Virus record (IMG/VR): IMGVR_UViG_3300025121_000011
Coordinates: 271,170-335,169 of that record
DNA length: 64,000 nucleotides
Direction: 5' to 3' (one strand)
Shown: piece by piece, positions 2,615-64,000 of the stretch
Position numbering within the stretch: the stretch's first letter is position 1
Layout of the letters: each line of letters opens with the position of its first letter
The notes under the pieces: generated by a model
What the model was told of the DNA's origin: nothing
Databases searched by the model: none
The model's input: only the letters and a program-made list of their open reading frames with translations
Made by a program: the position numbers and the translations under genes

Positions 2615-2676
2615 AATACTGGTCGGATTTGTTCTGGTTGCAGTTGTTTCTGGTCTTATAATGGAGGGAGTGTGTC

Positions 2677-3345: not shown

Positions 3346-3365
3346 TTATACAAAGGAGAGATTCA

Positions 3366-3647: not shown

Positions 3648-3662
3648 TCGGAGGATTGTTCG

Positions 3663-3875: not shown

Positions 3876-3877
3876 TC

Positions 3878-4147
3878 ATGAAAGACGCGAGCATTATCAG
3901 GCTGAAGAAAGAACTTGAAATGCTTGCGCGCAGGCGGCATGCATTGGAAGGGCATCGACTTCTTGCAAATGTTTTAGAAAGCATTAGACGATATGAAGAT
4001 GAAACAGGAGATGTAGTGAGATGTTCCCTTGAATTTGTCGCTGAGCAAGATCAAGATTCTGTACGGCATGAATGGATTGGTGGCGGATTTAAGGCTGAGC
4101 CCCAATGGTATCTGCAAAAGAATCATGTTGTTTTAGAAGAGATATGA
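3878..4147 (+). CDS. hypothetical protein
   Basis: GAGGAG RBS. Confidence 0.6.
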   Translation: MKDASIIRLKKELEMLARRRHALEGHRLLANVLESIRRYEDETGDVVRCSLEFVAEQDQDSVRHEWIGGGFKAEPQWYLQKNHVVLEEI

Positions 4148-4386
4148 GCATGCAAGTACAAGTAGCTCTACCCAAAACAGAGGAAGAGATTCTCGCCTAT
4201 CTTCAGGGATTGCAACCTGGAGAGAGAGTGAGAGAAACTGGTAATTCTATGACAAATCAAGAAGGCGATGTCTCCATCAATGGACGTGGAAGCGTCTGTG
4301 TACTTTGGGATCCATTTGAAGATGGGAACCGGATGGGGACATCTATAACTTATGGCACACGAAGAGTGTCTGATCTAGAGGAATAG
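4144..4386 (+). CDS. hypothetical protein
   Basis: ATGA overlap with the upstream ORF. Confidence 0.55.
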   Translation: MSMQVQVALPKTEEEILAYLQGLQPGERVRETGNSMTNQEGDVSINGRGSVCVLWDPFEDGNRMGTSITYGTRRVSDLEE

Positions 4387-4423
4387 TATGTGATCGCAAT
4401 AAATTAGAGTTAAAATGTTCGCA

Positions 4424-4482
4424 GGCGGCAAAAACTTAACTGCATCTCTAAAAAAATATTCTACATAGTAATATAGGGCTGT
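4424..4482 (+). promoter_or_regulatory. repeated phage promoter-like motif upstream of a ~900-nt non-coding region
   Basis: GGCGGCAAAA...CTCTAAAAAAATATT...TAGTAATATAGGG with no ORF following. Confidence 0.65.
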
Positions 4483-4547
4483 GAGAGGAGCTAACTTGAA
4501 GGGCTAAAGAGTTTGTGGTGATGATAGTGTTAGTTGAGTTAACTTCT

Positions 4548-4622
4548 TTCACAGGACCTGGAGACTTCTCGGAAATATTTAAGATGGTATCATAACCGAC
4601 TGGCAGGGAGCCGCACGGCAAC
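4548..4622 (-). CRISPR. solitary spacer-like segment plus 36-nt repeat-like element
   Basis: 4548-4586 matches each of the three tandem Imm5-like genes at 34/39 (e.g. 24834-24872); 4587-4622 reads GTTGCCGTGCGGCTCCCTGCCAGTCGGTTATGATAC on the minus strand, present once only. Confidence 0.4.
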
Positions 4623-4952
4623 AAAGGGCGTTCACCTTAGGGTGGGGGTCTGCCAAAATGATCAAGCCAAGCCTTGCAGGTAGGAGTGACCGGCGAAACT
4701 CCCGTAACCTGAGTAGGAGAATGGCAAGACGTGAGGGACATGCAGTCGACCCTTAGGGATACGATAATCCCCATTTTTTAACATCGTTACAAATAAGTGT
4801 TTATTGAGTTTCACCAGTATCTCGGATAAAGGCGATGTTAAAGTTAAAACTGGTACTTGTTCTTAGCGGATCCCCGGCTCCGCGTTTGCCCAGAGGAAAG
4901 CCGAGAGACGTATAGTTTCTAACGGGTAGGCAGCATCGCAAGAGTGCCTGAT

Positions 4953-5152
4953 AAAAAGAGGTTATCGGTGGTTGGCTTAGAGGCAGCCATCCTTAATGAG
5001 TGAGACGATTGCCCCAAGGCGCAAAATGTCGGTAAGTGGTAACAGCTATGCCGATGATGTACCGGGGATAAACAGGGAAAGTGAAAGGCACCCCGTAACT
5101 GGTAAGGCCAATCTTCTCTTCAGCGTAATAGCACGCCGATATAATCTCTTTT
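4953..5152 (+). ncRNA. structured RNA resembling 23S rRNA helices 43/44 (L11-binding GTPase-associated centre), with an insertion
   Basis: GGTTGGCTTAGAGGCAGCCATCCTTAATGAGT...GCGTAATAGC, closed by the AAAAGAGGTTATCGGTG / CGCCGATATAATCTCTTTT stem. Confidence 0.65.
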
Positions 5153-5493
5153 AGGTAGGTCCACATGGAATAGCCAAGCGCTATGGGATCGAATATTATC
5201 GCATTTGGGAATGGTACTCTCCCGCTGGTTGTACCACCTTCTTAAGCGTCAGACATTTACAATGCATAATGCCGGTTAATTTTGCCGGTTAAAGTTGTGA
5301 ATGTAGAAAACACTTGTATATATAAGAACACAAGCAGTGACGTAAGTCTGTGATGATTCTATGCAGACACTCTATCATAAATTATAAAAGATGCGCAGCT
5401 TTAAAGCTGCGCATCTTCATTTATGTGTTGGCACAGGAAATGCATTATGCAAAAATCATGCCAGTTAATTATTGTGCAAAAATCAACGTCTCC

Positions 5494-5550
5494 GGCGGCA
5501 AAAACTTAACTTCTCTTCTAAAAAAATATTCTATAGAGTAACATAGGGCT
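5494..5550 (+). promoter_or_regulatory. repeated phage promoter-like motif
   Basis: GGCGGCAAAA...CTAAAAAAATATT...GAGTAACATAGGG; opposed sigma54-like pair at 5429-5463. Confidence 0.65.
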
Positions 5551-5564
5551 GTAGGAGAAACCAA

Positions 5565-5810
5565 ATGCCTTCCATCGATTATTCGGTATATATGAGGACC
5601 AGGTTACTGGACAAGGTAACCATGGCACAGCTGATAAAGGTTTGTAAAGATCGACAAGATCTGACCGTTACTCAGGAAGGTGACGATATCTTTCGTGTCT
5701 ATCTTGATGTTCCAGGAAATCTGAACGCTGTTAGGATTTTGGAAGCGATTCATCGCGCAGATCGTTGGTGGGATGTAGCTTATGATCTTCGTTTCATGAA
5801 AAGCCTATAA
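5565..5810 (+). CDS. hypothetical protein
   Basis: AGGAG RBS after the promoter motif. Confidence 0.65.
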   Translation: MPSIDYSVYMRTRLLDKVTMAQLIKVCKDRQDLTVTQEGDDIFRVYLDVPGNLNAVRILEAIHRADRWWDVAYDLRFMKSL

Positions 5811-5834
5811 TACAATCTTGTATCAGGAGGAAAG

Positions 5835-6095
5835 ATGAAATTTCTTTCAAGTCTTTTCAACAAGCTTTTTGGTCGTCCTGCCGCTGAAATGTATCTTCAT
5901 CGAATGACGACGGCTATCTTGGATGAAGAGTTACAAGCGATGAATTATCGGGCTTGTCTTGAACATTCCGGTATGGATATTGATACATTCTGTGAGAAAA
6001 ACAAGTGTAGTCGTCAATCAATCATCAACGGATGGACGAGAGTATACGGTTCTCCTCCTTCATGGATGAATAAATCTGATTTCATTGGAGAATAA
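5835..6095 (+). CDS. hypothetical protein
   Basis: AGGAGG RBS. Confidence 0.65.
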   Translation: MKFLSSLFNKLFGRPAAEMYLHRMTTAILDEELQAMNYRACLEHSGMDIDTFCEKNKCSRQSIINGWTRVYGSPPSWMNKSDFIGE

Positions 6096-6099
6096 TCAC

Positions 6100-6468
6100 A
6101 TGACAATTCCAAAGCCGAATTATACCGACATTAGGCGTCAAAGGGAAGCGTTGGAGCTTGCTGTTAAACTCCGAAGGCAAAGAGAGGCGGACGAGCTTAA
6201 AGCCGGTCTTGAAAGACAGGAAGCGGAAAGAAACAATGAGTGCTTTGAAGAGCGTGTGCGTTGCGCCATTCAGGAGGGTATTGGAGACGCAATCACAAGA
6301 GGGGTTCCGACCTTCCATGTTCGAGTTGGAAATGTTGATCCCCTTAGTCTTATAGATCTGGCAAACTGGGGACATCAGATTACCTGCTATGGATTTAGGG
6401 TGTGCTTTTCGGCTCTCGATAAATGTAACCCTCCAAATGGAGTTGTGTTTACAGTTTCTGTTGAATAA
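6100..6468 (+). CDS. hypothetical protein (N-terminal coiled coil)
   Basis: GGAG RBS before ATG 6100. Confidence 0.6.
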   Translation: MTIPKPNYTDIRRQREALELAVKLRRQREADELKAGLERQEAERNNECFEERVRCAIQEGIGDAITRGVPTFHVRVGNVDPLSLIDLANWGHQITCYGFRVCFSALDKCNPPNGVVFTVSVE

Positions 6469-6491
6469 ATATAAATGGAGATAGACAAATC

Positions 6492-6869
6492 ATGCCTGAT
6501 TCTTTGGATCTTGCCCTACAACAGATTCGCGACACTTTATGTGTAAGCGGGGATACACATCCCCTTTCACTGGATATCACATTTCAACTTGAAGTAGAGC
6601 GCGGAAATAAAGTTGAGGATAATGATTGGACTATTACATCTCTGGGTGTAGTTGAGGTTTCTTTGCCGCTTAACCGCTTTCTTTGCGGCAAGATGAGTCG
6701 TCCAGACTGGATGACAGAAAGCCAATGGCAAGCATTTGCCATAGTTCAATACGAAACAACCGAAGATCCAGAGTTCAGAGAAAGTTTAGATCATGCTCTG
6801 AATTCTCTTCTCTCAGAACCACACACAGAAGAAGAAGTTTCAAAGTTTCTTGCAACATTTAACCAATAG
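6492..6869 (+). CDS. hypothetical protein
   Basis: GGAG RBS; 125 aa. Confidence 0.65.
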   Translation: MPDSLDLALQQIRDTLCVSGDTHPLSLDITFQLEVERGNKVEDNDWTITSLGVVEVSLPLNRFLCGKMSRPDWMTESQWQAFAIVQYETTEDPEFRESLDHALNSLLSEPHTEEEVSKFLATFNQ

Positions 6870-7054
6870 GGGTTTTATCATGGTCAAGGTTCTTGTATCA
6901 ATCTGTTTCGGGTTTTGTCTTGGTGTGGCTACTTGTGTCTTTGCAAGTGAGGTGGTTTCTTCACAAGTTCACAAGGTGGATGCGGCTGTGACCGCATATC
7001 AGAAGTAAGGAGTCCGAAGAGTAACAGCAGTCGTCTATACATGTATGTAAGTAT

Positions 7055-7139
7055 GGGGGCGTGGCGGAAAGGCAGACGCGTCAGACTTAAAATCTGGTGA
7101 GCTTAGCTCGTGTGGGTTCAAGTCCCACCGCCCCTACCA
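7055..7139 (+). tRNA. tRNA-Leu(TAA)
   Basis: cloverleaf; anticodon arm TCAGA-ctTAAaa-TCTGG; long variable arm; encoded CCA. Confidence 0.93.
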
Positions 7140-7168
7140 TTTTAACTTTAACTTTATCTGAGGTGTTC

Positions 7169-7408
7169 ATGAATCCTTATATCCTTTGTCCTGAATTGAA
7201 CAAGTTGAACAACTATTACAAGAATGATTTCTATAAGAATGATCTCTCTTCTATTGTTATTGTTGGTTCCGTAGTCACACTGAATAGTGGTGGGCCGAAA
7301 ATGACGGTCGCCTCTATCTATAGAGGTAAAAATGTTGTTTGCACTTGGTTTGATGGTGAATATAAGACGTGGTACGGAGTTGTATCGATGCTTACTGTGG
7401 TAAAGTAG
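7169..7408 (+). CDS. DUF2158/YodC-like protein
   Basis: GSVVTLNSGGPKMTV...VVCTWFDG signature; GAGG RBS. Confidence 0.7.
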   Translation: MNPYILCPELNKLNNYYKNDFYKNDLSSIVIVGSVVTLNSGGPKMTVASIYRGKNVVCTWFDGEYKTWYGVVSMLTVVK

Positions 7409-7503
7409 ATTTACTTCAAAGCCTTCTTTATAAAGTCTTCTTTATATAGATAACCGCTTAAGCGGTTATCTATATTTGCGTTTACATACTAATCGCAAAG
7501 CCC

Positions 7504-7562
7504 GGCGGCAAAAGATTTGCAGCATCTCTAAAAAAATATCTTCTATAGTAATACAGAGGTGT
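7504..7562 (+). promoter_or_regulatory. repeated phage promoter-like motif
   Basis: GGCGGCAAAA...CTCTAAAAAAATAT...TAGTAA. Confidence 0.65.
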
Positions 7563-7667
7563 AACCAAGTCGGAGAAGTCCTCCCAATTACATTAATATT
7601 ACGGTTACGGGGTTTGGAGTTTTTCACCTCACGAAAGACCAACATTTTTCAAAGGAGGAATCAAATC

Positions 7668-8015
7668 ATGGATTCGGAACAGTTTGTCAAGGCAGGTGGT
7701 CGTTTTCTTCATTACCGAAGTTCTGCTCAACGTAGAATTACGGTGGCATATCGAGTGGAAAATGGGAATATTCTCTATGGGGCGGAGATTCATCAACCAG
7801 ATGGTCCGGATGATTGCTGGATAAGGAAACAGGCAAATTATCGAGCTTTGTATCGGCTGATTAGCCAGCCGGTGACTATTCCTGATGGGAATATGACAAA
7901 TACCGAGAGGCATAGTTATATCCGAAGTGCTCTTATCAAGTTTGGGTGTTGCCAAAGAGAAGTTCTTTCTGTCAATAAAAATATCGCCGGGAAGGACTTG
8001 AAGAGAAGGGTTTGA
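7668..8015 (+). CDS. hypothetical protein; 3' end runs into the CRISPR-derived locus
   Basis: AAAGGAGG RBS before ATG 7668. Confidence 0.65.
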   Translation: MDSEQFVKAGGRFLHYRSSAQRRITVAYRVENGNILYGAEIHQPDGPDDCWIRKQANYRALYRLISQPVTIPDGNMTNTERHSYIRSALIKFGCCQREVLSVNKNIAGKDLKRRV

Positions 8016-8172
8016 GGGATTTGAGATCAAGAGCTTCAATGGAGGGCCAAGTCTGCGGGGCTGTTTATGCTGCTTATGATAATGCTGCTGTTTATGGTAG
8101 CAAGCCCCTCTCGAACGGGGCCAAGTCTGCTGGTTCCTCAGATGATCTGATTATGCTGTTGAAAAGTAGCAA
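7984..8172 (-). CRISPR. degenerate chimeric CRISPR mini-array (two repeat families, three spacers)
   Basis: partial family-1 repeat 7984-7997, spacer 7998-8032, chimeric repeat 8033-8059, spacer 8060-8096, 37-nt family-2 repeat 8097-8133 (GCCCC/GGGGC hairpin), spacer 8134-8165, partial repeat GTAGCAA 8166-8172. Confidence 0.7.
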
Positions 8173-8662
8173 AAAGCCATCGGTAGCCATGGAGGAGTTT
8201 GTTGGGTCAACCAATAGATGTCGATTCCGAATCTGATGCAAGGCTCGTGTCCCGGATTTGCTTGCGGGAAAAGAGGTGGTGAATTGACCGTCTATGCGTT
8301 ATTACGTGTGGCCCGTCAAACATTGGACCTCATAGTTTGAGTGACGAACCTATTCTCAAACACACTTTACACCAGAAGAGAGTCATGCCTGGACGCAGGA
8401 AGATATACAGAACATAAAAGAATGGGCGCAATTCTCATCCTTCTGGTGTCTTTTATTTTATAATTTAGTCTTCACTTAAGAGTATCATGCTTTTGTCCTT
8501 CTTGTTGATGCGCTGATGCCTGTATTAACTCTGATACTAGACTAATCTGTAGTTACTTATATCAATGTTAAGGCGGCAAAACTTTTGCACATGCAGGCAC
8601 GAAAGCTGCTATATGCAAGAATCATGCCAAGGGTTGAGAGTATTGACGCGACAAGAATTCCT

Positions 8663-8822
8663 GGCGGCAAAAGCTTTACAGCAACTTTAAAAAAATATCC
8701 CCCGTAGTAACTAAGAGGTGCAGGGGCAAGGTTCCAGACTCCAGCCCGGTAGCCCCTGCCGACCGGGCGGCCAAAACGGCCTTCTAACTCTAAAAAAATA
8801 TTCTATAGAGTAATATAAGGCC
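8663..8822 (+). promoter_or_regulatory. two tandem copies of the phage promoter-like motif
   Basis: copies at 8663-8720 and 8766-8822 upstream of ORF 8865. Confidence 0.65.
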
Positions 8823-8864
8823 AGCCGCCTGAGCGGCAAATAACAACAAACAGAGAGGTGTGAG

Positions 8865-9467
8865 ATGGGTAGTTTTAAGTTTAAGATTGGTGCCGCTGCT
8901 GCTGCTCCGACCGAGCGACATCCTGTGGAAGTCATGACGGACTCCGTAAATCTTGTGGATTTCGTTCGAAACGGTGAGCTGGTTCCGGCTTTCGCCTTTG
9001 CAACGGCCGATGGTCGTGGTACGTCTCCGGAAGTCGTTCCCCTTGATGAGATTGAAGAGTATGCGGCAGTTCTGCGAAAGGCCCTTGACGAGGGCATTCC
9101 GGAGCGAGCAGAAGATGATGAAGGTTATATTCCTTCTTATGTTGTTCTTGCAGCGGAACTTCATCAAGGCGAATACACGACGATTCGAAAGGATGCTTCT
9201 GGCGAACCCGTGAAGCTGAATGGTAAGGTGCAGCGCGATGATCATGGTGTGCGGTACTTCTTCCGGAGTAACACTGGACGGGGTGCGAAAACCCAGAAGA
9301 TTCGGCCTGAGCATTTTGAAGATGTGGTTGGATTCGTTGAGGCCCTGATTGACGAGGTTCCTGGCACCCTTGATATGTGGAATAGGGAGCTTCCAAACAT
9401 TATGAAAGCTCGGGCTGAGGCTGAAGCCAAGGCTCAGACTGAGGCTGCCAAGGCTGCCAACGCCTGA
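8865..9467 (+). CDS. hypothetical protein, probably highly expressed
   Basis: 200 aa; GAGG RBS; double promoter motif upstream and hairpins downstream. Confidence 0.8.
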   Translation: MGSFKFKIGAAAAAPTERHPVEVMTDSVNLVDFVRNGELVPAFAFATADGRGTSPEVVPLDEIEEYAAVLRKALDEGIPERAEDDEGYIPSYVVLAAELHQGEYTTIRKDASGEPVKLNGKVQRDDHGVRYFFRSNTGRGAKTQKIRPEHFEDVVGFVEALIDEVPGTLDMWNRELPNIMKARAEAEAKAQTEAAKAANA

Positions 9468-9514
9468 TCGATACGGATGTGATTGTGTGTGATTGGGAAT
9501 TGAAAATGATTTAA

Positions 9515-9583
9515 GATTCAGTCTTTCCCGGCGATAAAAACCGGGAAAGACATCTCTGCTTCCTCAGATGATCGATTAAACTG
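9515..9583 (-). CRISPR. solitary diverged repeat plus spacer
   Basis: 37-nt element 9515-9551 aligns to the family-1 repeat without gaps (22/37, CCCGG/CCGGG stem kept); 9552-9578 is a 27/27 match to 24782-24808. Confidence 0.55.
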
Positions 9584-9587
9584 CTTT

Positions 9588-9615
9588 CGGGACAAGCTTT
9601 CGGGTTTGTCCCGTT
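9588..9615 (+). terminator. GC-rich hairpin, possible terminator
   Basis: CGGGACAAGC...GTTTGTCCCG inverted repeat. Confidence 0.35.
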
Positions 9616-9729
9616 CCTGCGTTTACGATGTCAAATTTTTGCCGCCCACGCATATGTGCAACTCTAAAAAAATATTCCACATAGTAATATAGGGCTGTAA
9701 GCAAACACCATTTCAAAGGAGATTATCCA

Positions 9730-9972
9730 ATGCGATTCCTGACCAGGCTTTTTTCCGCGATCTCTATTATCCTTGCCGCTCTGACTTCGGCCGTGTTTAC
9801 AGCTATTATCACCGGATTTGTTCTGATGCTTCTGTGGAACTGGTTGCTTGTTGGAGCTACCTCTGTGATCGGAGTGGGGCTTCCTGCAATCACTTGGCTT
9901 CAGGGTTGGGGGCTTTGTTTCCTTTGTACTATGCTTTTCAATAGTCGTTCAAAGATCGGGGCTTCTACCTGA
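9730..9972 (+). CDS. membrane protein
   Basis: AAAGGAG RBS; promoter motif at 9662-9697; hydrophobic helices. Confidence 0.7.
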   Translation: MRFLTRLFSAISIILAALTSAVFTAIITGFVLMLLWNWLLVGATSVIGVGLPAITWLQGWGLCFLCTMLFNSRSKIGAST

Positions 9973-9988
9973 CATCTGCCTGAATAAA

Positions 9989-10064
9989 GGGACGTTAACT
10001 CAATTGGTAGAGTAGCGGACTTTTAATCCGTTTGTTTGGGGTTCGAGTCCCCAACGTCCCACCA
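9989..10064 (+). tRNA. tRNA-Lys(TTT)
   Basis: cloverleaf; GCGGA-ctTTTaa-TCCGT; CCA end. Confidence 0.93.
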
Positions 10065-10170
10065 TTTAATAACGAGCGGTTCCGGAAAAAGCTATCCGGA
10101 TAGTGAGAGTGGCGAAGGTCTCACGAACAAGTGGAGTAGCTTCCATACGATCCTGATCCCCATAAGTTAC

Positions 10171-10250
10171 AATCCGGTGGTAGCTCAGCAAGGTTAGAGC
10201 GCTCAGACAACTGAGAAAACGCGGGTTCAATTCCCGCCCCCGTATTACTA
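10171..10250 (+). ncRNA. tRNA-like element with a 4-nt anticodon loop
   Basis: D arm GCTC...GAGC; CTCAG-acaa-CTGAG; T arm GCGGG-TTCAATT-CCCGC; poor acceptor stem. Confidence 0.5.
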
Positions 10251-10405
10251 CGAAAGCGGTGATGGTGAGCAGCCCGAGATCTACAGTAATAGACGTATGA
10301 GTGGATGCGTTAGAGACACCTGCGGAGTCCTTGAGATGTTGATGTAAGGGTCTCACCACTATTTAACTTTTCTAACATTTAACCCTTTTAACAAAGGAGC
10401 TTCCG

Positions 10406-10804
10406 ATGCCTCTTGAAGATAATGAAAACCTTGCCATGGAATTGGTTCGGGTTGCTGATGTGATCCAAATTTCTATTTCCTACTTGACCAGGCTTGTTGA
10501 ATCCTTGGTAGCTCAAAACCCCTCTGATCGTTCAAGGAATGAAGGTGATGCCATCCTTAAGATGATTAATGAAAACAAAGATGCTCTGGCTGAGGGAGTT
10601 GCCGCTATCTATAGCAAGTATTGGTCTCCAGAGGTAATGCAAGCAGCTATTGATTGGAATAATAGTGCTTCATGCATGGAGATGAAGGCGAAAACAGCAG
10701 TTGTCTCTGCGGAAGTAGAACAACTCTCGGGTGTGTGGATGCAACAGATTGTTGCTTCTGTTCTCGGTTCTGATGGTAATCAAACACTCGATACCCTCAA
10801 TTAA
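10406..10804 (+). CDS. DUF2059-like helical protein
   Basis: IYSKYWSPEVMQAAIDWNNS pattern; AAAGGAG RBS. Confidence 0.5.
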   Translation: MPLEDNENLAMELVRVADVIQISISYLTRLVESLVAQNPSDRSRNEGDAILKMINENKDALAEGVAAIYSKYWSPEVMQAAIDWNNSASCMEMKAKTAVVSAEVEQLSGVWMQQIVASVLGSDGNQTLDTLN

Positions 10805-10834
10805 GATTAATTCTTATACTTAAGAGGTGTAGTA

Positions 10835-11350
10835 ATGACTTGTGTAACTATGTATTTGATTGGTGGCCTTCAGTTTCTTGGGATTATAGTTGGAGTGATG
10901 TTAGTAACCGTACTCATTTTTGCCGGACCTGCTCTATTTTGGAGATGGGCTGTAGGCTTTAGGATGGTTGATTTTATCTGGAATGATCAGGACAAGGTAT
11001 ATAAACACGTCTGGATTCGGAAGAATCCGGGATGGCTTATCAGGTTTCTTGATCGTTTGACGCCAGGTTGGATTAAAAAGATTTCATCTTTTCTCTATAC
11101 TTGGTTTGAACGAACCATGCCAAAGTTGTTCATCATTCTGATGGGTTTACTTGTAGTCTCTATTTTGGGATTTGGTTCATACGGATACTCTCAGCAACAA
11201 GTCTTAATTTCATTCTCAGAAGAGTGTGAATACACTTGTCGAGAGGATGAAACCTCTCGACTCTGGGAAGAAGATGGAGATATCAAGTGTGCTTGCACTC
11301 CAGTTGGTGCAGAGGAAGTCTTTATCCTCGGACATATTCCTTGCGGATGA
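10835..11350 (+). CDS. membrane protein
   Basis: two hydrophobic segments; GAGG RBS. Confidence 0.65.
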   Translation: MTCVTMYLIGGLQFLGIIVGVMLVTVLIFAGPALFWRWAVGFRMVDFIWNDQDKVYKHVWIRKNPGWLIRFLDRLTPGWIKKISSFLYTWFERTMPKLFIILMGLLVVSILGFGSYGYSQQQVLISFSEECEYTCREDETSRLWEEDGDIKCACTPVGAEEVFILGHIPCG

Positions 11351-11386
11351 AATGAAAACCAAGGAAGAGTTTCTCAACTCTTCCGC

Positions 11387-11445
11387 GGCGGCAAAAACTT
11401 AACTGCATCTCTAAAAAAATATCCTCCGTAGTAACTAAGGGGTGT
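11387..11445 (+). promoter_or_regulatory. repeated phage promoter-like motif
   Basis: GGCGGCAAAA...CTCTAAAAAAATAT...TAGTAA. Confidence 0.65.
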
Positions 11446-11543
11446 AAATCCAATAGGAATCGGAGATGACAGTGTTCCGAGCGTAAGAATGTTTGACTCT
11501 CCGATTTCTTTTTGGAAAAACCTTTACTACTCAGGAGTATCTA

Positions 11544-11801
11544 ATGTCTTGTACGTGTCGCGATAACACTGGATGTTCAGTTTGTGATCCTTCTTGGGAG
11601 TCTGATTTGGAATCGTTTTTCGATTTCTCGTGTGAAGAGTGGCCGGATTTGTCCAACCTTCTCGATAGGGAGCCTTGGCTTCAAGATGTGATTGCATCGG
11701 CATATCTCAACGGCGCCATGCAAAAAGATGATGATGAAAATGAAGCGGCTTTTGATCAGTATCTGGCGATAGAAGATTACAACATCGATGACTCCGATTG
11801 A
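11544..11801 (+). CDS. very acidic small protein
   Basis: AGGAG RBS; D/E-rich with an N-terminal Cys cluster. Confidence 0.6.
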   Translation: MSCTCRDNTGCSVCDPSWESDLESFFDFSCEEWPDLSNLLDREPWLQDVIASAYLNGAMQKDDDENEAAFDQYLAIEDYNIDDSD

Positions 11802-11867
11802 AATATTCTTTCTGTATTTCCTAAAGACTGTTGGCAAATAGGGCTTATTTTATAAGGAGAATTACTC

Positions 11868-12158
11868 ATGGCTATTTATGTATCAAATGCTGATAGTGTT
11901 CCAAAGTGTCAGCATTGGGCTATTCTCAAGTTTCAAACAATCCATATTCCCGGTGATGAAAGAAGTCGAACAAATCCCGGGCACGGATATGGTCCTTCTA
12001 CAGAAACCACTTGTTCATATGTTGCATATATGAACGAACAGGAGTGGGTGGTAGAAGTTCAAAAACTTGCGTCCCGAGCATTTCCTTCGGATGACTTTAT
12101 TGCAATCAAGGTAATTCCCGCCACAATTACTACAAAGGTAAGCGTTAGCGTATCTTGA
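11868..12158 (+). CDS. hypothetical protein
   Basis: AAGGAG RBS. Confidence 0.65.
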   Translation: MAIYVSNADSVPKCQHWAILKFQTIHIPGDERSRTNPGHGYGPSTETTCSYVAYMNEQEWVVEVQKLASRAFPSDDFIAIKVIPATITTKVSVSVS

Positions 12159-12262
12159 TGGAACTCAAGATCTTTTCAGAAAAGAATATTTGATATGCAA
12201 AGATTTAGAATATGGATTCATTTCTTTGCATAAGTCTTTTTCTCTTGTCTTTACTTTCTCAG

Positions 12263-12364
12263 CTGCATCTTCTGAAAGCATTTGCATATATGTGTTTTTG
12301 TTGTTTTTTCGTCGATTCGCATGTCAAATAATACATATCATACAAGTGCTTTCAGAAGATGCAG
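12263..12364. repeat. 22-bp inverted repeat with a 58-nt loop
   Basis: CTGCATCTTCTGAAAGCATTTG / CAAGTGCTTTCAGAAGATGCAG. Confidence 0.7.
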
Positions 12365-12433
12365 AGAGATACCTATATCTCCGTTCTCTATAATTGTAGA
12401 TGAGATGTCTCGCATATAAACATCCAAAAGTAT

Positions 12434-12778
12434 ATGAGGAGGGTTGATATGTATTATATCATCTTCGAACGAGGACCAGATGCAACAAAGAAGCTTGTTG
12501 TTGGACCATTTTATACGGTTCTAATCACACTCGATTTGTTGCGAGTAGATGATTGCAAAACCTTGGCATCATTTAGTGGATACACGCTCAATAGTGATGT
12601 TCAACCTTATTGGTGGATTGAATATATTTTTCCGCCAGGGATTGAAGATCATTTTCAAGATATAACTATTTCAATCACTTCTCCCACAAACTCTCCAGAC
12701 GGATTCATCGAACTGGATGATAGTGGAGACAATCCTTTGAGGGCAAACTATTGGACGAACCCTACGTATTCAACCTGA
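12434..12778 (+). CDS. hypothetical protein
   Basis: 114-aa ORF. Confidence 0.55.
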   Translation: MRRVDMYYIIFERGPDATKKLVVGPFYTVLITLDLLRVDDCKTLASFSGYTLNSDVQPYWWIEYIFPPGIEDHFQDITISITSPTNSPDGFIELDDSGDNPLRANYWTNPTYST

Positions 12779-13041
12779 CAAATTGCAACGCTGATGTGTG
12801 CGAGCTATTTCCAGCAGACTTGATTAAGGCACAACGCATCGGATTTGCCGATCTCCAGGTTGGAGATTTGATCTTATCCTTTACTGATGATTATAAGCCA
12901 GCGTGGAATGAGGTTACGTTTGTTTCTCGCAAATACGAATTAATGCGCGTGTATTGGAGCGTAGACAACGGTGAGCGATATATGTGTTGGGGTGATACTC
13001 CAATATACATCAAAAAGAAACTAAAACAGGAGGTTGCATGA
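12751..13041 (+). CDS. hypothetical protein, paralogue of 13366-13665
   Basis: shares ADVCE...RI.FA.L..GDLILS..DD..PA.N.V; start uncertain. Confidence 0.6.
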   Translation: MDEPYVFNLTNCNADVCELFPADLIKAQRIGFADLQVGDLILSFTDDYKPAWNEVTFVSRKYELMRVYWSVDNGERYMCWGDTPIYIKKKLKQEVA

Positions 13042-13057
13042 GTCATTATATGAGTTA

Positions 13058-13342
13058 GTATTAATGGGGCCCGGCTTCTGTCGCCGGGAAGGACGAAGTA
13101 TCCGAAGGATTTACGACCGAGAAAAGCTGTTGCTTCAATGGGGCCCGGCTTCTGTCGCCGGGAAGGACTTGAAGAGAAGGGTCCGAAGGATTTGAGACCA
13201 GGAGCTTCAATAGAGGGCCTAAGTCTGCAAGGAACACATCTTTAATCTTATTATATCTCTGCTTCCATAGGTTAGCGAGTCCCTTCCGATAAGGAAGGGA
13301 CTCTGTCTATCTTCAACAGGGGACTTCTGCTGCCGGGAAGAA
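13058..13342 (-). CRISPR. CRISPR mini-array (type I-G/I-C-like 37-nt repeat), no cas genes nearby
   Basis: repeat GTCCTTCCCGGCGACAGAAGCCGGGCCCCATTGAAGC (minus strand) at 13132-13168 and at 13058-13094 (decayed 3' end); spacers of 37 and 35 nt; degenerate repeats at 13204-13231 and 13310-13342. Confidence 0.85.
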
Positions 13343-13365
13343 ATAAGAATAGGAGGTTGTAAGTT

Positions 13366-13665
13366 ATGAGTCACTATTGGAGGTTTAACTCTCAGGATTC
13401 TCATGCAGATGTGTGTGAAGATTATGGAGTAGAACAACTTGGAGTAACACGCATTCGATTTGCCTATCTTAAATTTGGAGATCTAATTCTGTCTATTGAT
13501 GACGATAATAGACCTGCTTATAACTTAGTGGTTTATGTTTTACTAAAGGAAGACAAGGTAATTTGGGAAGTAGAAGGTGTTCGATATATATCTTCAAAAG
13601 AAAGCGCGGTGTATGTAGACAGCGCAGTGCATGTTAAAAATCGAGAAGCAGAAACAAACGGCTGA
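13366..13665 (+). CDS. hypothetical protein, paralogue of 12751-13041
   Basis: AGGAGG RBS; sequence similarity to 12751. Confidence 0.65.
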   Translation: MSHYWRFNSQDSHADVCEDYGVEQLGVTRIRFAYLKFGDLILSIDDDNRPAYNLVVYVLLKEDKVIWEVEGVRYISSKESAVYVDSAVHVKNREAETNG

Positions 13666-15035
13666 TTGATTCTTTGGCGGAAAATTTTAACGCAATATCC
13701 GGCATGATTCTTGCTTGATGCAATATCCATGCCGACCATACAAATCCCAGGCGGCAAAACCTTTACACCAGCTACAGTCGACACTGGGTACAAAAACTTT
13801 GCAGCACAAACAATCCATGGCGGCAAAAGTTTGTCATGCGCATTATTCAACTGGATACAAAAACTTTGCACAAGATATAACCAACTCTTATACATCATCA
13901 TCTTATAAAAAAAATCATGAAGCTAATACAAGGCTGTAAATAGAACGGATTGGTTAGCAATCCATTGGATTGCCTTGATTAATACTAAGGGAGAGTTTCA
14001 GTTATGACATCAATAATCTTTGGCATCATTGCTGCAATGCTTTTTCTGGTATTATTCGTTCTTCTGCTTTATGAGCTTGATACTTTTTATCGAGGACTGC
14101 TCGCAGAGTTTGTGGAGTGGATGGCACAACGACCAAAACGACCAAAGAAATAACAAAGAAAGAATTAAAAAAGAATGGAGTTGATCTTAACTCTCAGCTT
14201 TCTTTATTTGCTGTGGTATTTATTTATTTTTAGAGGAGAATAACATGATGGAATTTTTTCTTATTCTTTTTTTGTGGTTTGGATTCGTCTCTATTCTATA
14301 CTTGCTTTCTGTTATCAGAGGAAATAGAGGAGACGAAGACTGATTACCCATTTGATACCCGTTTGGTCGTAATCCTTTTTGAATAGGGAGCGTAAATGTT
14401 CTGGAAACTTTTGCCGTTGATTATGGTTATCATTTTAACTGCACCTTACTTTTATAACTCGTACAAAGAATCTCTCATTAGAAAGAAGATTCCTGGGAAT
14501 AAAGACTTTTCTGAGGATGGGACTTTTTCTGAGTAATCGACTTTTTCTGAGAATGAAAAGTTTTTAAAGGGGGGGGGGTGCAGTTTTAAAAGTTAAAAGT
14601 AACTGAGTAACGGTTGAAAACTGACCCAGGTACCTTTCTAACTTTATAAAAATATTTACTCCTTTTTATTAAAGCATCGCTGCAAATGCATACCTAAATG
14701 CATACCTAAAAAATATAATCTGGAAATATTTAAAGAAATATCATACAACCTATTCACAGACATGAACATGCGTTTTCTTTCTACTGACACTCGCTTCAAA
14801 CACTCTCCTAAAGAAAGTGAAAGAGTATTTATTACTGAGAGTGAGGATTTGCAGAATAAGCCGTAGAATCATTGTGATACTGTTATTAACAAAAAAGATG
14901 ATCAACGTGTGCGAACATATCACACAGAGTTTCCAGAGTTTCATTAAGGTCCGTATACAGATACGCATATCCGAAAATATATTCTGGAAATTTTTTTTCC
15001 AGATATTTATATAAGACATTCATACGGAAATACTC

Positions 15036-15257
15036 ATGCAAACTATAATCATTCGTATCGCAGACTCTGAATGCGAAGCGGAAGACTCGAATAATTACTC
15101 CGTCATTACCGTTAACCGAGACTATCTTACTTCGGTATTAAAAATACTGAATGAAAGTAACCTGGTTCAGTATTTCTATGTCTCTGATGGAGTTAACTTG
15201 TTTGATCAAGTTTCGCTGGGATATGATCACAATGCTTATCCAAAGTTGGTTAAGTAA
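15036..15257 (+). CDS. hypothetical protein, tandem duplicate 1
   Basis: closely similar to 15328-15564 (YSVITV.R.YLT...YFYVSDGV.LFDQ..LGYD.NAYPK). Confidence 0.7.
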   Translation: MQTIIIRIADSECEAEDSNNYSVITVNRDYLTSVLKILNESNLVQYFYVSDGVNLFDQVSLGYDHNAYPKLVK

Positions 15258-15327
15258 CCTTTGGTGGATTAAGTGACTTTTAACTCTCTTTAGGTAAATA
15301 CAAATTCTCATTCATACGGAGATACTC

Positions 15328-15564
15328 ATGCAAATGGTAATTATTCGCGTCGCATACTTTTCTTTCTACTTTGAAGGTCTAAAAGTAGAAGGGCAAAAGG
15401 GTTATTCGGTCATTACCGTTGAACGATCATATCTTACTCCGATGTTGGAAATGCTGAACGCAAGTGATCGTGTCGAGTATTTCTATGTCTCTGATGGAGT
15501 TGGATTGTTTGATCAGGCTGCGTTAGGATATGATCGCAATGCTTATCCAAAGTGGGCTTACTAA
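15328..15564 (+). CDS. hypothetical protein, tandem duplicate 2
   Basis: paralogue of 15036, including the upstream CATTCATACGGA leader. Confidence 0.7.
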   Translation: MQMVIIRVAYFSFYFEGLKVEGQKGYSVITVERSYLTPMLEMLNASDRVEYFYVSDGVGLFDQAALGYDRNAYPKWAY

Positions 15565-15852
15565 CCTTTAGTGGATTAACTAACCTTTTCGCAAGTTTCC
15601 GCTGAGTCTCGACGCAGAATAACAAGGAGAATAAAGCTATGAAAATTTATATCATTGCAATGTCTGATAACGGTGGATGTTGGATTCCCGGATCGGAATT
15701 TTTTTCAATTTTTGCAATGCAGAAAAAGCTTTAGCTCTCCGCAAGGAGAAGAAACCTTATCTCTGAATCTATACTCTTCGCGCTGTTGATTCTGAAACTC
15801 CCGCTCTTTAGACATGGGCACATATGCGTTCATTTAACCGTAGGAGTATAAA

Positions 15853-24104: not shown

Positions 24105-24438
24105 GAAAAAGAGTGGATTGATTTTTATTATGGTTTATCAGTCCTCCTTCATATTTAGTTATATAATTGCTTATACGGTTGTTTTAGATGTTTTGTCTAT
24201 ATTTAAATAGCAATATACAAAAGATATACGTCTAAGAAAAGTTTGAATTAAGTAAAAATATTTAGATAGCGATAAAATTCAGTATCTGTTGAGTTTGTTA
24301 GAGAAATTTATACACAAATTGATGAAGTTAATATCATTGGGTATTATTCTTCTTATGATGTTATTCATGTTGATGTTAACCGATGAACAGAAGAAATCGG
24401 TGATATATAATATGGATGCAATTGGAGGTTGGAAATGA
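24105..24438 (+). pseudogene. decayed copy of the Imm5-like tandem gene
   Basis: retains ATTGCTTATACGGTT...CTAAGAAAAG and GTTAACCGATGAACAGAAGAAA...ATGGAT, but is broken by stops and frameshifts. Confidence 0.65.
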
Positions 24439-24935
24439 TCTCATCAAGAGATTTGATTCTTTTTATTAATCCTCCAAAATATTTATCCGTATTGATTGCT
24501 TATACAGTTGCCGCAGATGTTCTGCCTATATTTGAAAAGCATTTTCCGAAGGATTTGAGACCGAGAAAAGCTGTTGAAGCGTCTAAGATGTATTTGGATG
24601 GATATGCGGTTGATGCTGCTGCTTATGTTGATGCTCCTTCTGCTCATTATGCTCCTTCTGCTCATTATGCTGCTGTTGCTGTTAATGCTGCTGATGCTTA
24701 TGCTGCTGCTAATGCTGCTGCTAATGCTGTTTATTTTACGGCCAAAGATTCTTCCGAAGAACACATCTTTAACCTAATTTTATCTCTGCTTCCTCAGATG
24801 ATCGATTATGCTGTTGAAAATCAAGTTAAGTTATTCACCGGGTCTGGAGACTTCTCAGAAATATTTGAGATGTTAACCGATGAACAGAAGAAGCTGGTGA
24901 TATACAATATGGATGTAATTGGGAATTGGAAATGA
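24435..24935 (+). CDS. Ala-rich Imm5-like protein, tandem copy 1
   Basis: A..VLPIFEK.FPKDLRPRKAVEA followed by an Ala/Tyr-rich tract; GGAGG RBS. Confidence 0.75.
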   Translation: MISSRDLILFINPPKYLSVLIAYTVAADVLPIFEKHFPKDLRPRKAVEASKMYLDGYAVDAAAYVDAPSAHYAPSAHYAAVAVNAADAYAAANAAANAVYFTAKDSSEEHIFNLILSLLPQMIDYAVENQVKLFTGSGDFSEIFEMLTDEQKKLVIYNMDVIGNWK

Positions 24936-25489
24936 TTTCATCAAAAGATTTGGTTTTATTCATTAATCCTCCTAAATATTTATCCGTATTGATTGCTTAT
25001 ACAGTTGCCGCAGATGTTCTGCCTATATTTGAAAAGCATTTTCCGAAGGATTTGAGACCGAGAAAAGCTGTTGAAGCGTCTAAGATGTATTTGGATGGAT
25101 ATGCGGTTGATTCTGCTACCGCTGTTAATGCTGCTAATGCTGCTGCTAATGCTGCTTATGCTGCTGTTAATACTGCTGCTAATGCTGCTGCTAATGCTGC
25201 TGCTTATGCTGCTGCTTATGCTGCTGCTTATGCTGTTTATTATGTTGATGCTACTGATGTTGCTGCTAATGCTGCTTATGCTGCTTGTTATGCAGCCAAA
25301 GCCTCTTCCGAAGAACACATCTTTAATCTTATTCTATCTCTGCTTCCTCAGATGATCAATTATGCTGTTGAAAATCAAATCAAGTTGTTCACCGGACCTG
25401 GAGATTTCTCAGAGATATTTGAGATGTTAACCGATGAACAGAAGAAGCTGGTGATATACAATATGGATGTAATTGGGAATTGGAAATGA
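24932..25489 (+). CDS. Ala-rich Imm5-like protein, tandem copy 2
   Basis: near-identical flanks, longer Ala-rich tract; ATGA coupling. Confidence 0.75.
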   Translation: MISSKDLVLFINPPKYLSVLIAYTVAADVLPIFEKHFPKDLRPRKAVEASKMYLDGYAVDSATAVNAANAAANAAYAAVNTAANAAANAAAYAAAYAAAYAVYYVDATDVAANAAYAACYAAKASSEEHIFNLILSLLPQMINYAVENQIKLFTGPGDFSEIFEMLTDEQKKLVIYNMDVIGNWK

Positions 25490-25995
25490 TTTCATCAAAA
25501 GATTTGGTTTTATTCATTAATCCTCCTAAATATTTATCTGTATTGATTGCTTATACAGTTGCCGCAGATGTTCTGCCTATATTTGAAGAGAAGTATCCGA
25601 AGGATTTAAGACCGAGAAAAGCTGTTGAAGTTGCTAAGATGTATTTGGAAGGATATGCTGCTGATGCTTATGATGCTGCTATTTATTATGTTACTGATGC
25701 TGCTTATGCTATTGATGCCACTGTTTATGCTGCTAATGCTGCTTATTATGCTGCTTATGCTGCTTATGCTGTTACTTATAATTCTGATGCTGCCTATGCC
25801 GCTTATTATGCAGCTAAAGCTTCTTCCGAAGAACACATCTTCAACCTGATTTTATCTCTGCTTCCTCAGATGATCAATTATGCTGTTGAAAATCAAATTA
25901 AGTTATTCACAGGACCCGGAGATTTCTCAGGAATATTTGAGATGTTAACCGATGAACAGAAGAAGCTGGTGATATTCAATATGGATGTAATTTAA
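25486..25995 (+). CDS. Ala-rich Imm5-like protein, tandem copy 3
   Basis: near-identical flanks; ATGA coupling. Confidence 0.75.
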   Translation: MISSKDLVLFINPPKYLSVLIAYTVAADVLPIFEEKYPKDLRPRKAVEVAKMYLEGYAADAYDAAIYYVTDAAYAIDATVYAANAAYYAAYAAYAVTYNSDAAYAAYYAAKASSEEHIFNLILSLLPQMINYAVENQIKLFTGPGDFSGIFEMLTDEQKKLVIFNMDVI

Positions 25996-63545: not shown

Positions 63546-63840
63546 TATATAGAAAGATTGAATCCAATACGGGCGCAAAATGTGTTTATGATTTCGAGTG
63601 TATACGTTATCCCAAGGGAAGGATAAATGGACGGAGAACTTATACTATTAATAAAGGAGAGTTTGCGTTATACTCCAATGACCATTGGGTCTGTTCGGAT
63701 TGTATTGTAAAATACATTAATCAACAGTTTGTGAATTTAATTGAAGTTTCCAAACAAATTATTGCAGAAGGTAATGCTGAAATGACAGAAGCAATTATAT
63801 TTAACTTGGGAGAGGTGGAAGAAATTCTTAAAGAAAAGAA

Positions 63841-64000
63841 ATGATTTCATCAAAGAATTTGGTTTTCTTCATCAATCCTCCTAAATATTTATCTGTATTG
63901 ATTACTTATACAGTTGCCGCAGATGTTCTGCCTATATTTGAAAAGCATTTTCCGAAGGATTTAAGACCAAGAAAAGCTGTTGAAGCGTCTAAGATGTATT
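63841..64000 (+). CDS. Imm5-like family paralogue (5' part, truncated by the window end)
   Basis: nearly identical to the 5' end of 24932-25489. Confidence 0.8.
   Translation, partial: MISSKNLVFFINPPKYLSVLITYTVAADVLPIFEKHFPKDLRPRKAVEASKMY

What the first reader, a model, noticed from the sequence alone, without database searches (positions are those of the whole stretch)
13058..13342. Mini-array with a near-perfect self-targeting spacer, a TTC PAM and its only mismatch at position 18
Seen: the 37-nt repeat ends in ATTGAAGC and has a CCCGGC/GCCGGG hairpin. Spacer 13095-13131 matches 25590-25626 at 36/37; in crRNA orientation the protospacer is preceded by TTC and the mismatch is at position 18. 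Spacer 13169-13203 matches 25583-25617 at 30/35 with a TTT flank. Segment 13232-13266 matches 25313-25347 at 34/35. An 11-bp perfect hairpin (GAGTCCCTTCC/GGAAGGGACTC) sits before the last decayed repeat. Established: TTN/TTC PAMs and such repeat ends are typical of types I-G and I-C, and every sixth guide base is unpaired in Cascade. Inference: the mismatch would not protect the phage, so it must shield its DNA, block Cas3, or use binding without cutting.
Basis: partly seen in the sequence, partly recalled or inferred. Interest (0 to 1): 0.88.

Follow-up and report, generated by a model that had tools for sequence, protein, structure and literature searches.

The report
Orphan CRISPR mini-array in huge phage
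A 335-kb groundwater phage carries a small, partly decayed CRISPR array of the type I-G class, with no cas genes, whose spacers all come from the phage's own multi-copy Imm5-like genes; it is a real feature, but more likely a silent captured relic or a sibling-exclusion device than proof of a special self-protection mechanism.

Summary
The 37-nt repeat belongs to a family that sits next to type I-G cas genes in five of five bacterial loci examined. Its geometry (6-bp hairpin, 4 nt, 8-nt ATTGAAGC handle) puts the crRNA sense on the window's minus strand.

- The targets are a paralogous Imm5-like family with at least 11 copies. Spacer 1 has at least 10 own sites, all with a TTC flank and no seed mismatch.
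- The C at position 18 is unique to the spacer and is a synonymous change.
- Only the unit R2-sp1-R1 is intact. Decayed sister loci lie at 7.96-8.17 kb and 9.49-9.58 kb.
- The array lies antisense inside a rightward transcription unit, just upstream of a plus-strand terminator, with no leader or recognisable minus-strand promoter.

No Cas3g relative was found on the complete circular genome, and no cognate host array turned up in the metagenome scan.

Best reading: a genuine I-G array built from DNA of this phage lineage, probably by primed adaptation, and now carried as a largely silent relic. An active weapon against sibling phages is the main rival. Self-targeting is real on paper but not shown to be executed. 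This is a new member of the known kind, viral orphan mini-arrays.

The parts
13058..13094 (-). Repeat R1, the terminal (trailer-end) repeat. The hairpin is intact; the last 8 nt are degenerate (ATTAATAC instead of ATTGAAGC).
13095..13131 (-). Spacer sp1 (37 nt). It is the only spacer flanked by two hairpin-competent repeats.
13132..13168 (-). Repeat R2, a perfect 37-nt type I-G-class repeat (hairpin, then CCCC, then the 8-nt handle ATTGAAGC).
13169..13203 (-). Spacer sp2 (35 nt). It has seed mismatches to every own Imm5-like copy; the flank is TTT.
13204..13231 (-). Repeat R3, a decayed 28-nt repeat. The handle ATTGAAGC is kept; the hairpin is lost.
13232..13266 (-). Spacer-like segment sp3 (35 nt). 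There is no repeat on its handle side. Its single difference from the Imm5-like genes creates TATAAT on the minus strand.
13277..13303 (+). 11-bp hairpin with a T-rich tail, terminator-like on the plus strand. Its arms resemble the 5' end of the repeat.
13309..13342 (-). Repeat remnant R4. The 3' arm of the hairpin is deleted.
13038..13057 (+). Stub of a small tandem paralog (start codon plus 5 codons, then a stop). The array has replaced the body of this gene; the matching gene end plus ribosome-binding site is at 13338-13359.
   Evidence: (families D4, D6)
25590..25629 (+). Best own target of sp1 (36/37), plus GAA, which reads as a TTC PAM on the other strand. It lies inside Imm5-like gene 25480-25995.
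25313..25347 (+). Best own match of sp3 (34/35), in Imm5-like gene 24926-25489.
24429..25995 (+). Three tandem Imm5-like paralogs (PF21805): 24429-24935, 24926-25489 and 25480-25995. Further sp1 sites are at 24539-24575 and 25036-25072.
63838..64000 (+). Start of another Imm5-like copy. It runs across the circular junction into a cluster of five copies at contig positions 1-2800. An sp1 site is at 63945-63981.
7953..8165 (-). Decayed sister array. In order: sp1 remnant; broken R2 (7966-7997); spA, which corresponds to sp2 (7998-8032); R3-type repeat (8033-8059); spB from the Ala/Tyr-rich middle of the gene (8060-8101); R3-type remnant (8102-8133); spC (8134-8165).
9492..9578 (.). Third remnant: an Imm5-like fragment (9492-9512), a palindromised repeat-like hairpin (9521-9551, 21/25 to the repeat's 5' part), and a 27/27 Imm5-like fragment (9552-9578).
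4548..4586 (+). Isolated Imm5-like fragment (34/39). No repeat is recognisable next to it.

Best explanation
What it is. This is a genuine CRISPR array of the type I-G repeat class. A complete, circular ~335-kb groundwater phage carries it without cas genes.

How it was built. A I-G adaptation module built it from DNA of this phage lineage. The oldest spacer, sp1 at the trailer end, covers the most conserved stretch of the multi-copy Imm5-like genes next to a TTC PAM. The younger spacers all come from the same family and the same strand, which is what primed adaptation started by sp1 would give. The array, or two diverged versions of it, then came to sit on the phage. Only the unit R2-sp1-R1 is still intact.

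What it does now. My judgement is that it is largely silent as a source of guides. It lies antisense inside a rightward transcription unit, ends at a plus-strand terminator, has no leader, and has hairpin-less repeats on its leader side. On this reading the near-perfect self-match is a record of where the spacers came from, not an attack that the phage must survive.

Shown: identity, class, orientation, origin of the spacers, number of own targets, absence of Cas3g. Inferred: priming, capture, silence.
For: - Repeat family and subtype. The repeats are 36-37 nt with a period of 70-77, most often 72-75; the period here is 74.
- Orientation from the hairpin + 4 nt + 8 nt geometry. There is also a sub-threshold Rfam CRISPR-DR16 match on the minus strand.
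- Both spacers with a defined handle-side boundary have TTN flanks.
- All 8-9 Imm5-like fragments have one orientation and spacer size, 21-42 nt.
- sp1 matches 10 distinct own sites with 0 seed mismatches. The position-18 C occurs in none of the copies seen.
- The 8-kb and 13-kb loci share the trailer-end units and differ at the leader end.
- Silence: a plus-strand terminator at 13277-13303 and no minus-strand promoter above chance; the phage's promoter-like element occurs ten times nearby, on the plus strand only; R3 and R4 do not fold into the repeat hairpin.
- The exact repeat is absent from 185,579 species genomes.
- A near-exact repeat pattern in the metagenome collection found only this phage.
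- No Cas3g relative on the contig, and no tblastn hit of I-G Cas proteins in about 88 kb of the genome.
- The sister loci are decaying.
Against: - R1 and R2 are identical over 32 nt, while the sister locus at 8 kb has lost its hairpin. This is what selection on the one complete unit would give, although the counts are too small to prove it (1 vs 4 lineage-specific changes in sp2).
- The terminal repeat is degenerate only beyond the Csb2 cut site, so a canonical sp1 crRNA could be made from any minus-strand transcript.
- The single change in sp3 makes a perfect TATAAT in the right place and direction, though the -35 element is weak.
- Sigma-70 consensus scans say little about an unknown host or about phage-specific promoters.
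- All assemblies are near-clonal (at least 99.7% identical), so conservation cannot be used either way.
- No expression data were available.
Confidence: 0.5

Rival explanations
1. Active mini-array used against sibling phages (heterotypic superinfection exclusion). A minus-strand transcript is processed by the host's Csb2 and loaded into host I-G Cascade, and it destroys incoming relatives that carry the Imm5-like family. The carrier survives because its own DNA is shielded or modified in cis.
For: - This is the documented role of viral mini-arrays (PMC6858448; PMC11656645).
- The unit R2-sp1-R1 is intact.
- sp2 has seed mismatches at positions 3 and 4 to every own copy and keeps a TTT flank, as a self-sparing weapon should.
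- Related but distinct Imm5-like-bearing contigs occur in one of the same samples (L126 and L128, 69-71% identity).
- A possible -10 element lies in sp3.
Against: - sp1 would hit at least 10 own sites with a TTC PAM and a perfect seed. In the described cases the self loci are mutated.
- Any trans-acting protection (an anti-CRISPR protein) would also protect the competitor, and siblings would share cis-acting protection.
- No non-self target matches better than self. No perfect protospacer exists anywhere in IMG/VR.
- sp2 lacks a processable upstream repeat.
- No leader, no cognate host array, and an antisense position.
Confidence: 0.22
2. RNA-level anti-CRISPR. There are two versions. In the first, a repeat-sense decoy ties up Csb2 and Cas7g, as Racr does. 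In the second, the plus-strand read-through transcript carries the antisense of the repeat and pairs with the host's I-G pre-crRNA repeats, so that normal processing is blocked. In both versions the spacers are passengers.
For: - Solitary-repeat RNA anti-CRISPRs and viral crRNA-like RNAs are established (PMC10651486 and 10.1101/2024.10.29.618823).
- The 13-kb array sits at the 3' end of a plus-strand unit, before a terminator-like hairpin. The 9.5-kb remnant sits just after a plus-strand ORF, and from reading its sequence a hairpin with a T-rich tail follows it (not run through the terminator scan).
- The repeat cores are the best-kept parts of the 13-kb locus.
- Passenger spacers would explain why a self-match is tolerated.
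- Two high-GC viral contigs carry a solitary 31/37-identical repeat in sense orientation between genes.
Against: - The decoy version needs minus-strand transcription, for which there is no sign.
- The antisense version has, to my knowledge, no precedent.
- The 8-kb copy has lost its repeat, so the repeat is not maintained everywhere.
- No cognate host repeat is known.
Confidence: 0.13
3. Guide-directed binding without cutting. The crRNA steers Cascade onto the phage's own Imm5-like genes to repress or time their expression. This was one of the first reader's options.
For: - The crRNA strand is complementary to the coding strand of all copies.
- Regulatory crRNA-like RNAs exist.
Against: - Regulatory guides described so far rely on partial complementarity. 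Here the seed-to-end match is effectively complete and the PAM is canonical, which licenses Cas3.
- The target lies inside coding sequence, about 110 nt from the start codon, not at a promoter.
- The same lack of minus-strand expression signals applies.
Confidence: 0.04
4. Not a CRISPR array: either a decayed Imm5-like pseudogene interrupted by a palindromic element, or a chance repeat.
For: - At 8 kb the fragments lie in gene order.
- spA, R3 and spB stay in one reading frame.
Against: - All fragments are spacer-sized, with no longer homology at the outer flanks.
- sp1 and sp2 cover overlapping target sites 7 nt apart, which a single gene remnant cannot give.
- spC is out of frame.
- The repeat belongs to a family of 36-37-nt repeats next to I-G cas genes, with the same period.
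- The flanks are TTN.
Confidence: 0.02

Closest known systems
Virus-borne mini-CRISPR arrays (Sulfolobales portogloboviruses SPV1/SPV2; phage and prophage mini-arrays surveyed by Faure et al., as reviewed in PMC11656645)
   Same: One or two usable spacers, no cas genes, repeats of a cellular CRISPR class, and spacers derived from the virus's own kin.
   Different: - The best targets are the carrier's own genes, with an intact PAM and seed, at 10 or more sites.
- No leader was found, and no host array with the same repeat.
- The array lies antisense to all neighbouring genes.
- It is accompanied by two decayed sister loci.
- It is of the type I-G class and sits in a 335-kb phage.
Type I-G (formerly I-U) CRISPR arrays of bacteria (Geobacter sulfurreducens and Thioalkalivibrio sulfidiphilus type)
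   Same: A 37-nt repeat with a hairpin followed by 4 nt and an 8-nt handle, a 74-nt period, TTN flanks, and close repeat relatives next to Cas3g, Csb1, Csb2 and Cas4g/Cas1g.
   Different: - It is an orphan: no cas genes within 13 kb on either side and no Cas3g relative on the genome.
- It has only two good repeats.
- The carrier is 35-40% G+C, whereas every cellular locus with this repeat family is 59-76% G+C.
RNA anti-CRISPRs (Racr; solitary repeat units) and viral crRNA-like regulators (Cracr)
   Same: Phage-borne CRISPR repeat material without cas genes. A solitary repeat of the same family does occur in two high-GC viral contigs.
   Different: Here there are true spacers, they match phage genes rather than host cas promoters, and no dedicated promoter is seen.
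Self-targeting spacers in bacterial genomes that are tolerated because of prophage anti-CRISPRs (my own knowledge; no paper was fetched for this)
   Same: A guide with an apparently lethal match to the genome that carries it.
   Different: Here the carrier is the phage itself, and it is not known whether the guide is ever made.

Membership tests
CRISPR array, type I-G repeat class | A 36-37-nt direct repeat with a stem-loop, then 4 nt, then an 8-nt 5' handle, which is where Csb2 cuts | tested here: met
   Fold; geometry described in 10.1101/2022.08.08.503147. Met only on the minus strand.
CRISPR array, type I-G repeat class | Relatives of the repeat lie next to type I-G cas genes in cellular genomes | tested here: met
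   Loci L116, L093, L014, L084 and L006 carry Cas3g, Csb1, Csb2, Cas4g/Cas1g and the Cas3-extension protein. The repeats are 27-33/37 identical, although 20 of those positions were fixed by the search pattern.
CRISPR array, type I-G repeat class | Regular repeat-spacer period and several repeats | tested here: met
   The period is 74 nt for R1 to R2; cellular arrays have 70-77, most often 72-75. Only two good repeats are present, plus two decayed ones.
CRISPR array, type I-G repeat class | Spacers taken next to the system's PAM | tested here: met
   TTC and TTT for the two spacers with a defined boundary. sp3 gives TGA, but its boundary is lost. The PAM of the cognate system itself is unknown, and I-G PAMs vary between systems.
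CRISPR-Cas locus (complete system) | cas genes on the same replicon | tested here: not met
   No Cas3g relative on the contig. No tblastn hit of I-G Cas proteins in about 88 kb of the genome. Cas7g, Csb2 and Cas8g were not scanned across the whole genome.
Viral mini-CRISPR arrays for interviral conflict | Repeat identical to that of the host's own array | tested here: inconclusive
   The host is unknown. The exact repeat had 0 hits in genome contigs, and the near-exact pattern in metagenome contigs found only the phage.
Viral mini-CRISPR arrays for interviral conflict | A leader or promoter precedes the array in the crRNA direction | tested here: not met
   No minus-strand promoter above chance, and no AT-rich non-coding leader. 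There is only a TATAAT inside sp3 with a 3/6 -35 element.
Viral mini-CRISPR arrays for interviral conflict | Spacers target related viruses | tested here: inconclusive
   Related contigs L126 and L128 match sp3 at 34/35 and sp1 at 33/37. No target is better than self, and there is no perfect protospacer in IMG/VR.
Viral mini-CRISPR arrays for interviral conflict | The carrier's own loci are mutated so that self-targeting is avoided | tested here: not met
   Not met for sp1: 10 own sites, TTC PAM, no seed mismatch, 0-3 effective mismatches. Met for sp2: seed mismatches at positions 3 and 4.
Racr (solitary-repeat RNA anti-CRISPR) | A single repeat without a spacer, under its own promoter | tested here: not met
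   Two repeats enclose a true spacer, and no promoter was found.
Cracr / viral crRNA-like regulators | The spacer is partly complementary to a host cas or toxin promoter | not testable with these tools
   The host is unknown. All spacers are explained by phage Imm5-like genes.

The most novel reading that the evidence does not exclude
The array is expressed only as part of the rightward mRNA. Its product would then be an antisense-repeat RNA that pairs with the repeats of the host's type I-G pre-crRNA, so that Csb2 can no longer process them. That would be an anti-CRISPR made from a captured, inverted piece of the host's own array, with the self-matching spacers as harmless passengers.
Probability: 0.08. 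Interest if true: 0.85.

Novelty: new member of a known kind. Interest (0 to 1): 0.5.

Why it matters
Viral mini-arrays are thought to spare their carrier. Here the only intact guide would, on paper, hit ten or more sites of its own 335-kb genome, each with a canonical PAM and seed.

If the guide is made, the phage must have a cis-acting way to keep type I Cascade-Cas3 off its DNA. In that case this locus is a ready-made reporter for that protection.

If the guide is not made, the locus is a clear fossil of a host-phage arms race centred on a multi-copy Imm5-like family. It would also be an example of CRISPR array pieces entering and decaying inside a huge phage.

Either way, it points to the Imm5-like genes as the part of this phage that CRISPR adaptation keeps sampling.

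Tried and rejected
- The exact 37-nt repeat in genome contigs gave nothing. The relaxed hairpin-plus-tail pattern was needed to find the family.
- The metagenome scan with a near-exact repeat pattern returned only the phage itself, from two samples. The host therefore stays unknown.
- Megablast of 20 kb against GenBank phages gave no match. The DNA ligase reaches only 34% identity to Aeromonas phages, which says nothing about the host.
- Exact cores of sp1 and sp3 in IMG/VR matched only the spacers themselves.
- 171 spacers from the cellular I-G arrays were compared with the phage; none matched.
- Rfam gave only a sub-threshold CRISPR-DR16 match.
- Homologues of the flanking genes gave only near-clonal copies of the same phage, so there is no comparative information on array turnover.
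- The pseudogene-with-insertions reading of the 8-kb locus was rejected on fragment size, the overlapping sp1 and sp2 targets, and reading frames.
- I tried to argue for selection on R1 and R2 from the 8-kb vs 13-kb divergence. The counts are too small (1 vs 4 polarised changes).
- The position-18 coincidence is not significant: 6 of 37 positions are multiples of six.
- Not attempted: whole-genome scans for Cas7g, Csb2, Cas8g, anti-CRISPR proteins or nucleus-shell proteins. I had only one sequence each for Cas7g and Csb2, and the pattern-based locus search finds only close relatives.

Full report
**Setting.** The window is the last 64,000 bases (positions 271170-335169) of a 335,169-bp viral contig, IMGVR_UViG_3300025121_000011, also recorded as Ga0208375_1000020. 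The last 127 nt of the contig equal its first 127 nt, so the assembly closes on itself and the genome is complete. It is a huge phage:
- Almost all ORFs are on the plus strand.
- It has 8-12 tRNA genes.
- It encodes DNA ligase, RNA ligases and an RtcB-like protein.
- It has no close relative among GenBank phages.

Near-clonal copies (at least 99.7% identical) occur in at least ten groundwater assemblies.

**Observation.** There are two 37-nt repeats, R2 perfect and R1 with three changes in its last 8 nt. Spacers of 37 and 35 nt lie between them and after R2. A decayed 28-nt repeat (R3) follows, then a third spacer-like segment, an 11-bp hairpin and a last repeat remnant (R4). The three matches to 25.3-25.6 kb are 36/37, 30/35 and 34/35. 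Shuffled sequence gives none. The array region is identical in nine further assemblies, and the covered part is identical in a tenth, partial contig.

**Class and orientation.** The exact repeat is absent from 185,579 species genomes. A pattern that keeps only the stem, the 4-nt spacing and ATTGAARC recovers many true arrays of 36-37-nt repeats with periods of 70-77 nt, most often 72-75.
- In all five such loci whose neighbouring genes I scanned and that contained cas genes, those genes are type I-G: Cas3g, Csb1/Cas7g, Csb2, Cas4g/Cas1g and the Cas3-extension protein.
- Published work on type I-G shows that Csb2 cuts 4 nt 3' of the hairpin base and leaves an 8-nt handle, that a TTN PAM is used, and that every sixth guide base is flipped out (10.1101/2022.08.08.503147).
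- This repeat has that layout (stem, CCCC, ATTGAAGC) only on the minus strand. Rfam's best match, though sub-threshold, is also on the minus strand.

One caveat applies: Bifidobacterium I-G uses TAT/TAC (PMC9335239), so the PAM of the cognate system is inferred, not known.

**The targets are a gene family, not one site.** The matched genes are Imm5-like putative immunity proteins (PF21805).
- Three lie in tandem at 24.4-26.0 kb. A divergent copy is at 56.2 kb.
- One copy runs over the circular junction into a cluster of five. Two or three more lie near contig position 20 kb.
- In the roughly 88 kb of the genome I could read, sp1 has 10 distinct sites. All have a TTC flank and no seed mismatch, and all have 0-3 mismatches once every sixth position is set aside. 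Two of the sites are 36/37.

The C at position 18 is found in none of the copies. It turns AGA into CGA, both arginine codons. It therefore came either from an unseen homologue or from drift in the spacer. Because 6 of 37 positions are multiples of six, its position is no evidence of design.

The other two spacers behave differently:
- sp2 differs from every own copy at seed positions 3 and 4 and keeps a TTT flank.
- sp3 has no repeat on its handle side, so its TGA flank means little.
- No perfect protospacer for sp1 or sp3 exists anywhere in IMG/VR, including the rest of this genome.

**More array remains.** A 74-nt stretch (part of R2, then sp2, then R3) recurs at 7984-8056 with 90.5% identity.
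- That locus continues with two other Imm5-like-derived spacers and R3-type repeats. Its R2 has lost the hairpin.
- In crRNA direction the two loci share the trailer-end units and differ at the leader end, as two descendants of one array would.
- A third remnant at 9492-9578 has two Imm5-like fragments around a palindromised repeat-like hairpin.
- All 8-9 fragments are spacer-sized and have the same orientation.

Together with the TTN flanks, this fits primed adaptation seeded by sp1. Every sp1 site lies inside tandem Imm5-like genes, so spacers picked up nearby would again be Imm5-like. This step is inference.

**Context.** The array replaced the body of a small tandem paralog. The start of that gene (13038) and its end plus ribosome-binding site (13338-13359) remain.
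- The nearest upstream promoter-like element is at 11387, on the plus strand. Ten such elements lie in the first 14 kb, all on the plus strand.
- The hairpin at 13277-13303 is a plus-strand terminator-like site, and no minus-strand promoter stands out.
- The one lead is that the single change in sp3 creates TATAAT on the minus strand, upstream of R3-sp2-R2-sp1-R1, with a weak -35 element.
- R3 and R4 cannot form the repeat hairpin. Even with a minus-strand transcript, only sp1 would be processed canonically.
- No Cas3g relative is encoded on the contig, and I-G Cas proteins have no tblastn hit in the parts held.
- The metagenome collection holds this repeat only on the phage.
- All cellular carriers of the repeat family are 59-76% G+C, against 35-40% for the phage.

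**Interpretation.** Identity is secure: this is an orphan type I-G-class mini-array on a huge phage, with spacers taken from its own lineage's Imm5-like family.

For function I favour a captured or retired array that is now silent as a guide source (confidence about 0.5). This reading needs no extra protection mechanism. It also fits the antisense position, the missing leader, the decayed leader-side repeats, the decaying sister loci and the missing cognate system.

The main rival is the documented role of viral mini-arrays, exclusion of sibling viruses (PMC6858448, PMC11656645). It fits sp2 and the intact R2-sp1-R1 unit. It has to explain why sp1 does not destroy the carrier, given that trans-acting protection would also save the competitor.

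RNA-level anti-CRISPR roles, as a sense decoy or as an antisense-repeat RNA, and guide-directed repression remain possible but have no direct support.

**Verdict.** This is a real feature and a new member of a known kind. It is unusual in that its only intact guide matches the carrier at many sites. One strand-specific RNA data set, or identification of the host, would settle the question.

Noticed in passing
window 24429-25995, 56189-56779, 63838-64000; L125:1-2800; L146:8806-10561: Imm5-like (PF21805) genes occur at least 11 times in tandem clusters. Their N- and C-terminal parts are conserved, and the Ala/Tyr-rich middle varies in length. The copy number and the role of this family in a phage are unexplained.
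   Followed up: partly
window 63874-64000 and L125:1-127: The last 127 nt of the contig equal its first 127 nt, so the assembly closes on itself. This indicates a complete genome of about 335,042 bp.
   Followed up: yes
window 1232, 2206, 3294, 4420, 5494, 7522, 8663/8788, 9657, 11387, 13748 (all + strand): A dispersed element of about 60 nt (GGCGGCAAAA ... CTCTAAAAAAATATTC ... TAGTAATATAGGGCTGT) precedes many small genes in the first 14 kb. It looks like a phage-specific promoter class and occurs on the plus strand only.
   Followed up: partly
L002:761-791 and L003:10858-10888 (IMGVR_UViG_3300032313_001750 and IMGVR_UViG_3300044533_001947): Two high-GC viral contigs of about 39 kb carry a solitary copy of a 31/37-identical type I-G-class repeat. 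It lies in sense orientation between two genes. It could be a solitary-repeat RNA anti-CRISPR candidate, or simply a terminator.
   Followed up: partly
L059 spacer at 1687 vs L002:1103-1124: A spacer of a Deltaproteobacteria MAG type I-G array matches one of those high-GC viral contigs at 21/22. This is a weak hint at a host link.
   Followed up: no
window 4590-5350: An ORF-free stretch of about 0.8 kb, relatively G+C-rich, follows a promoter-like element and an Imm5-like fragment. It has no credible Rfam match.
   Followed up: partly
window 44599-44661, 44940-45005, 46872-46985, 47535-47624, 10174-10244: Rfam calls five further tRNA-like genes, some weak or unusually long, that ARAGORN did not report, and it misses one that ARAGORN did report (45500-45583). 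That makes 12 Rfam calls against ARAGORN's 8.
   Followed up: no
L146 (same phage, near contig position 8-29 kb): Next to one Imm5-like cluster lie a Gad2-family gene (PF26128), an N6/N4 DNA methyltransferase, a SpoU methylase and a Cpn60 chaperonin. A radical SAM gene follows the cluster in the window (26026-26991). These are possible counter-defence or DNA-modification functions.
   Followed up: no
window 12751-13041, 13366-13665, 15017-15588: A family of small proteins (about 75-100 aa) occurs in tandem and has no database relatives outside this phage population. The array replaced one member.
   Followed up: partly
window 1-14000 vs the rest: The first 14 kb are 40-50% G+C, against 32-39% for the rest of the window. 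All the array remnants lie in this part.
   Followed up: no
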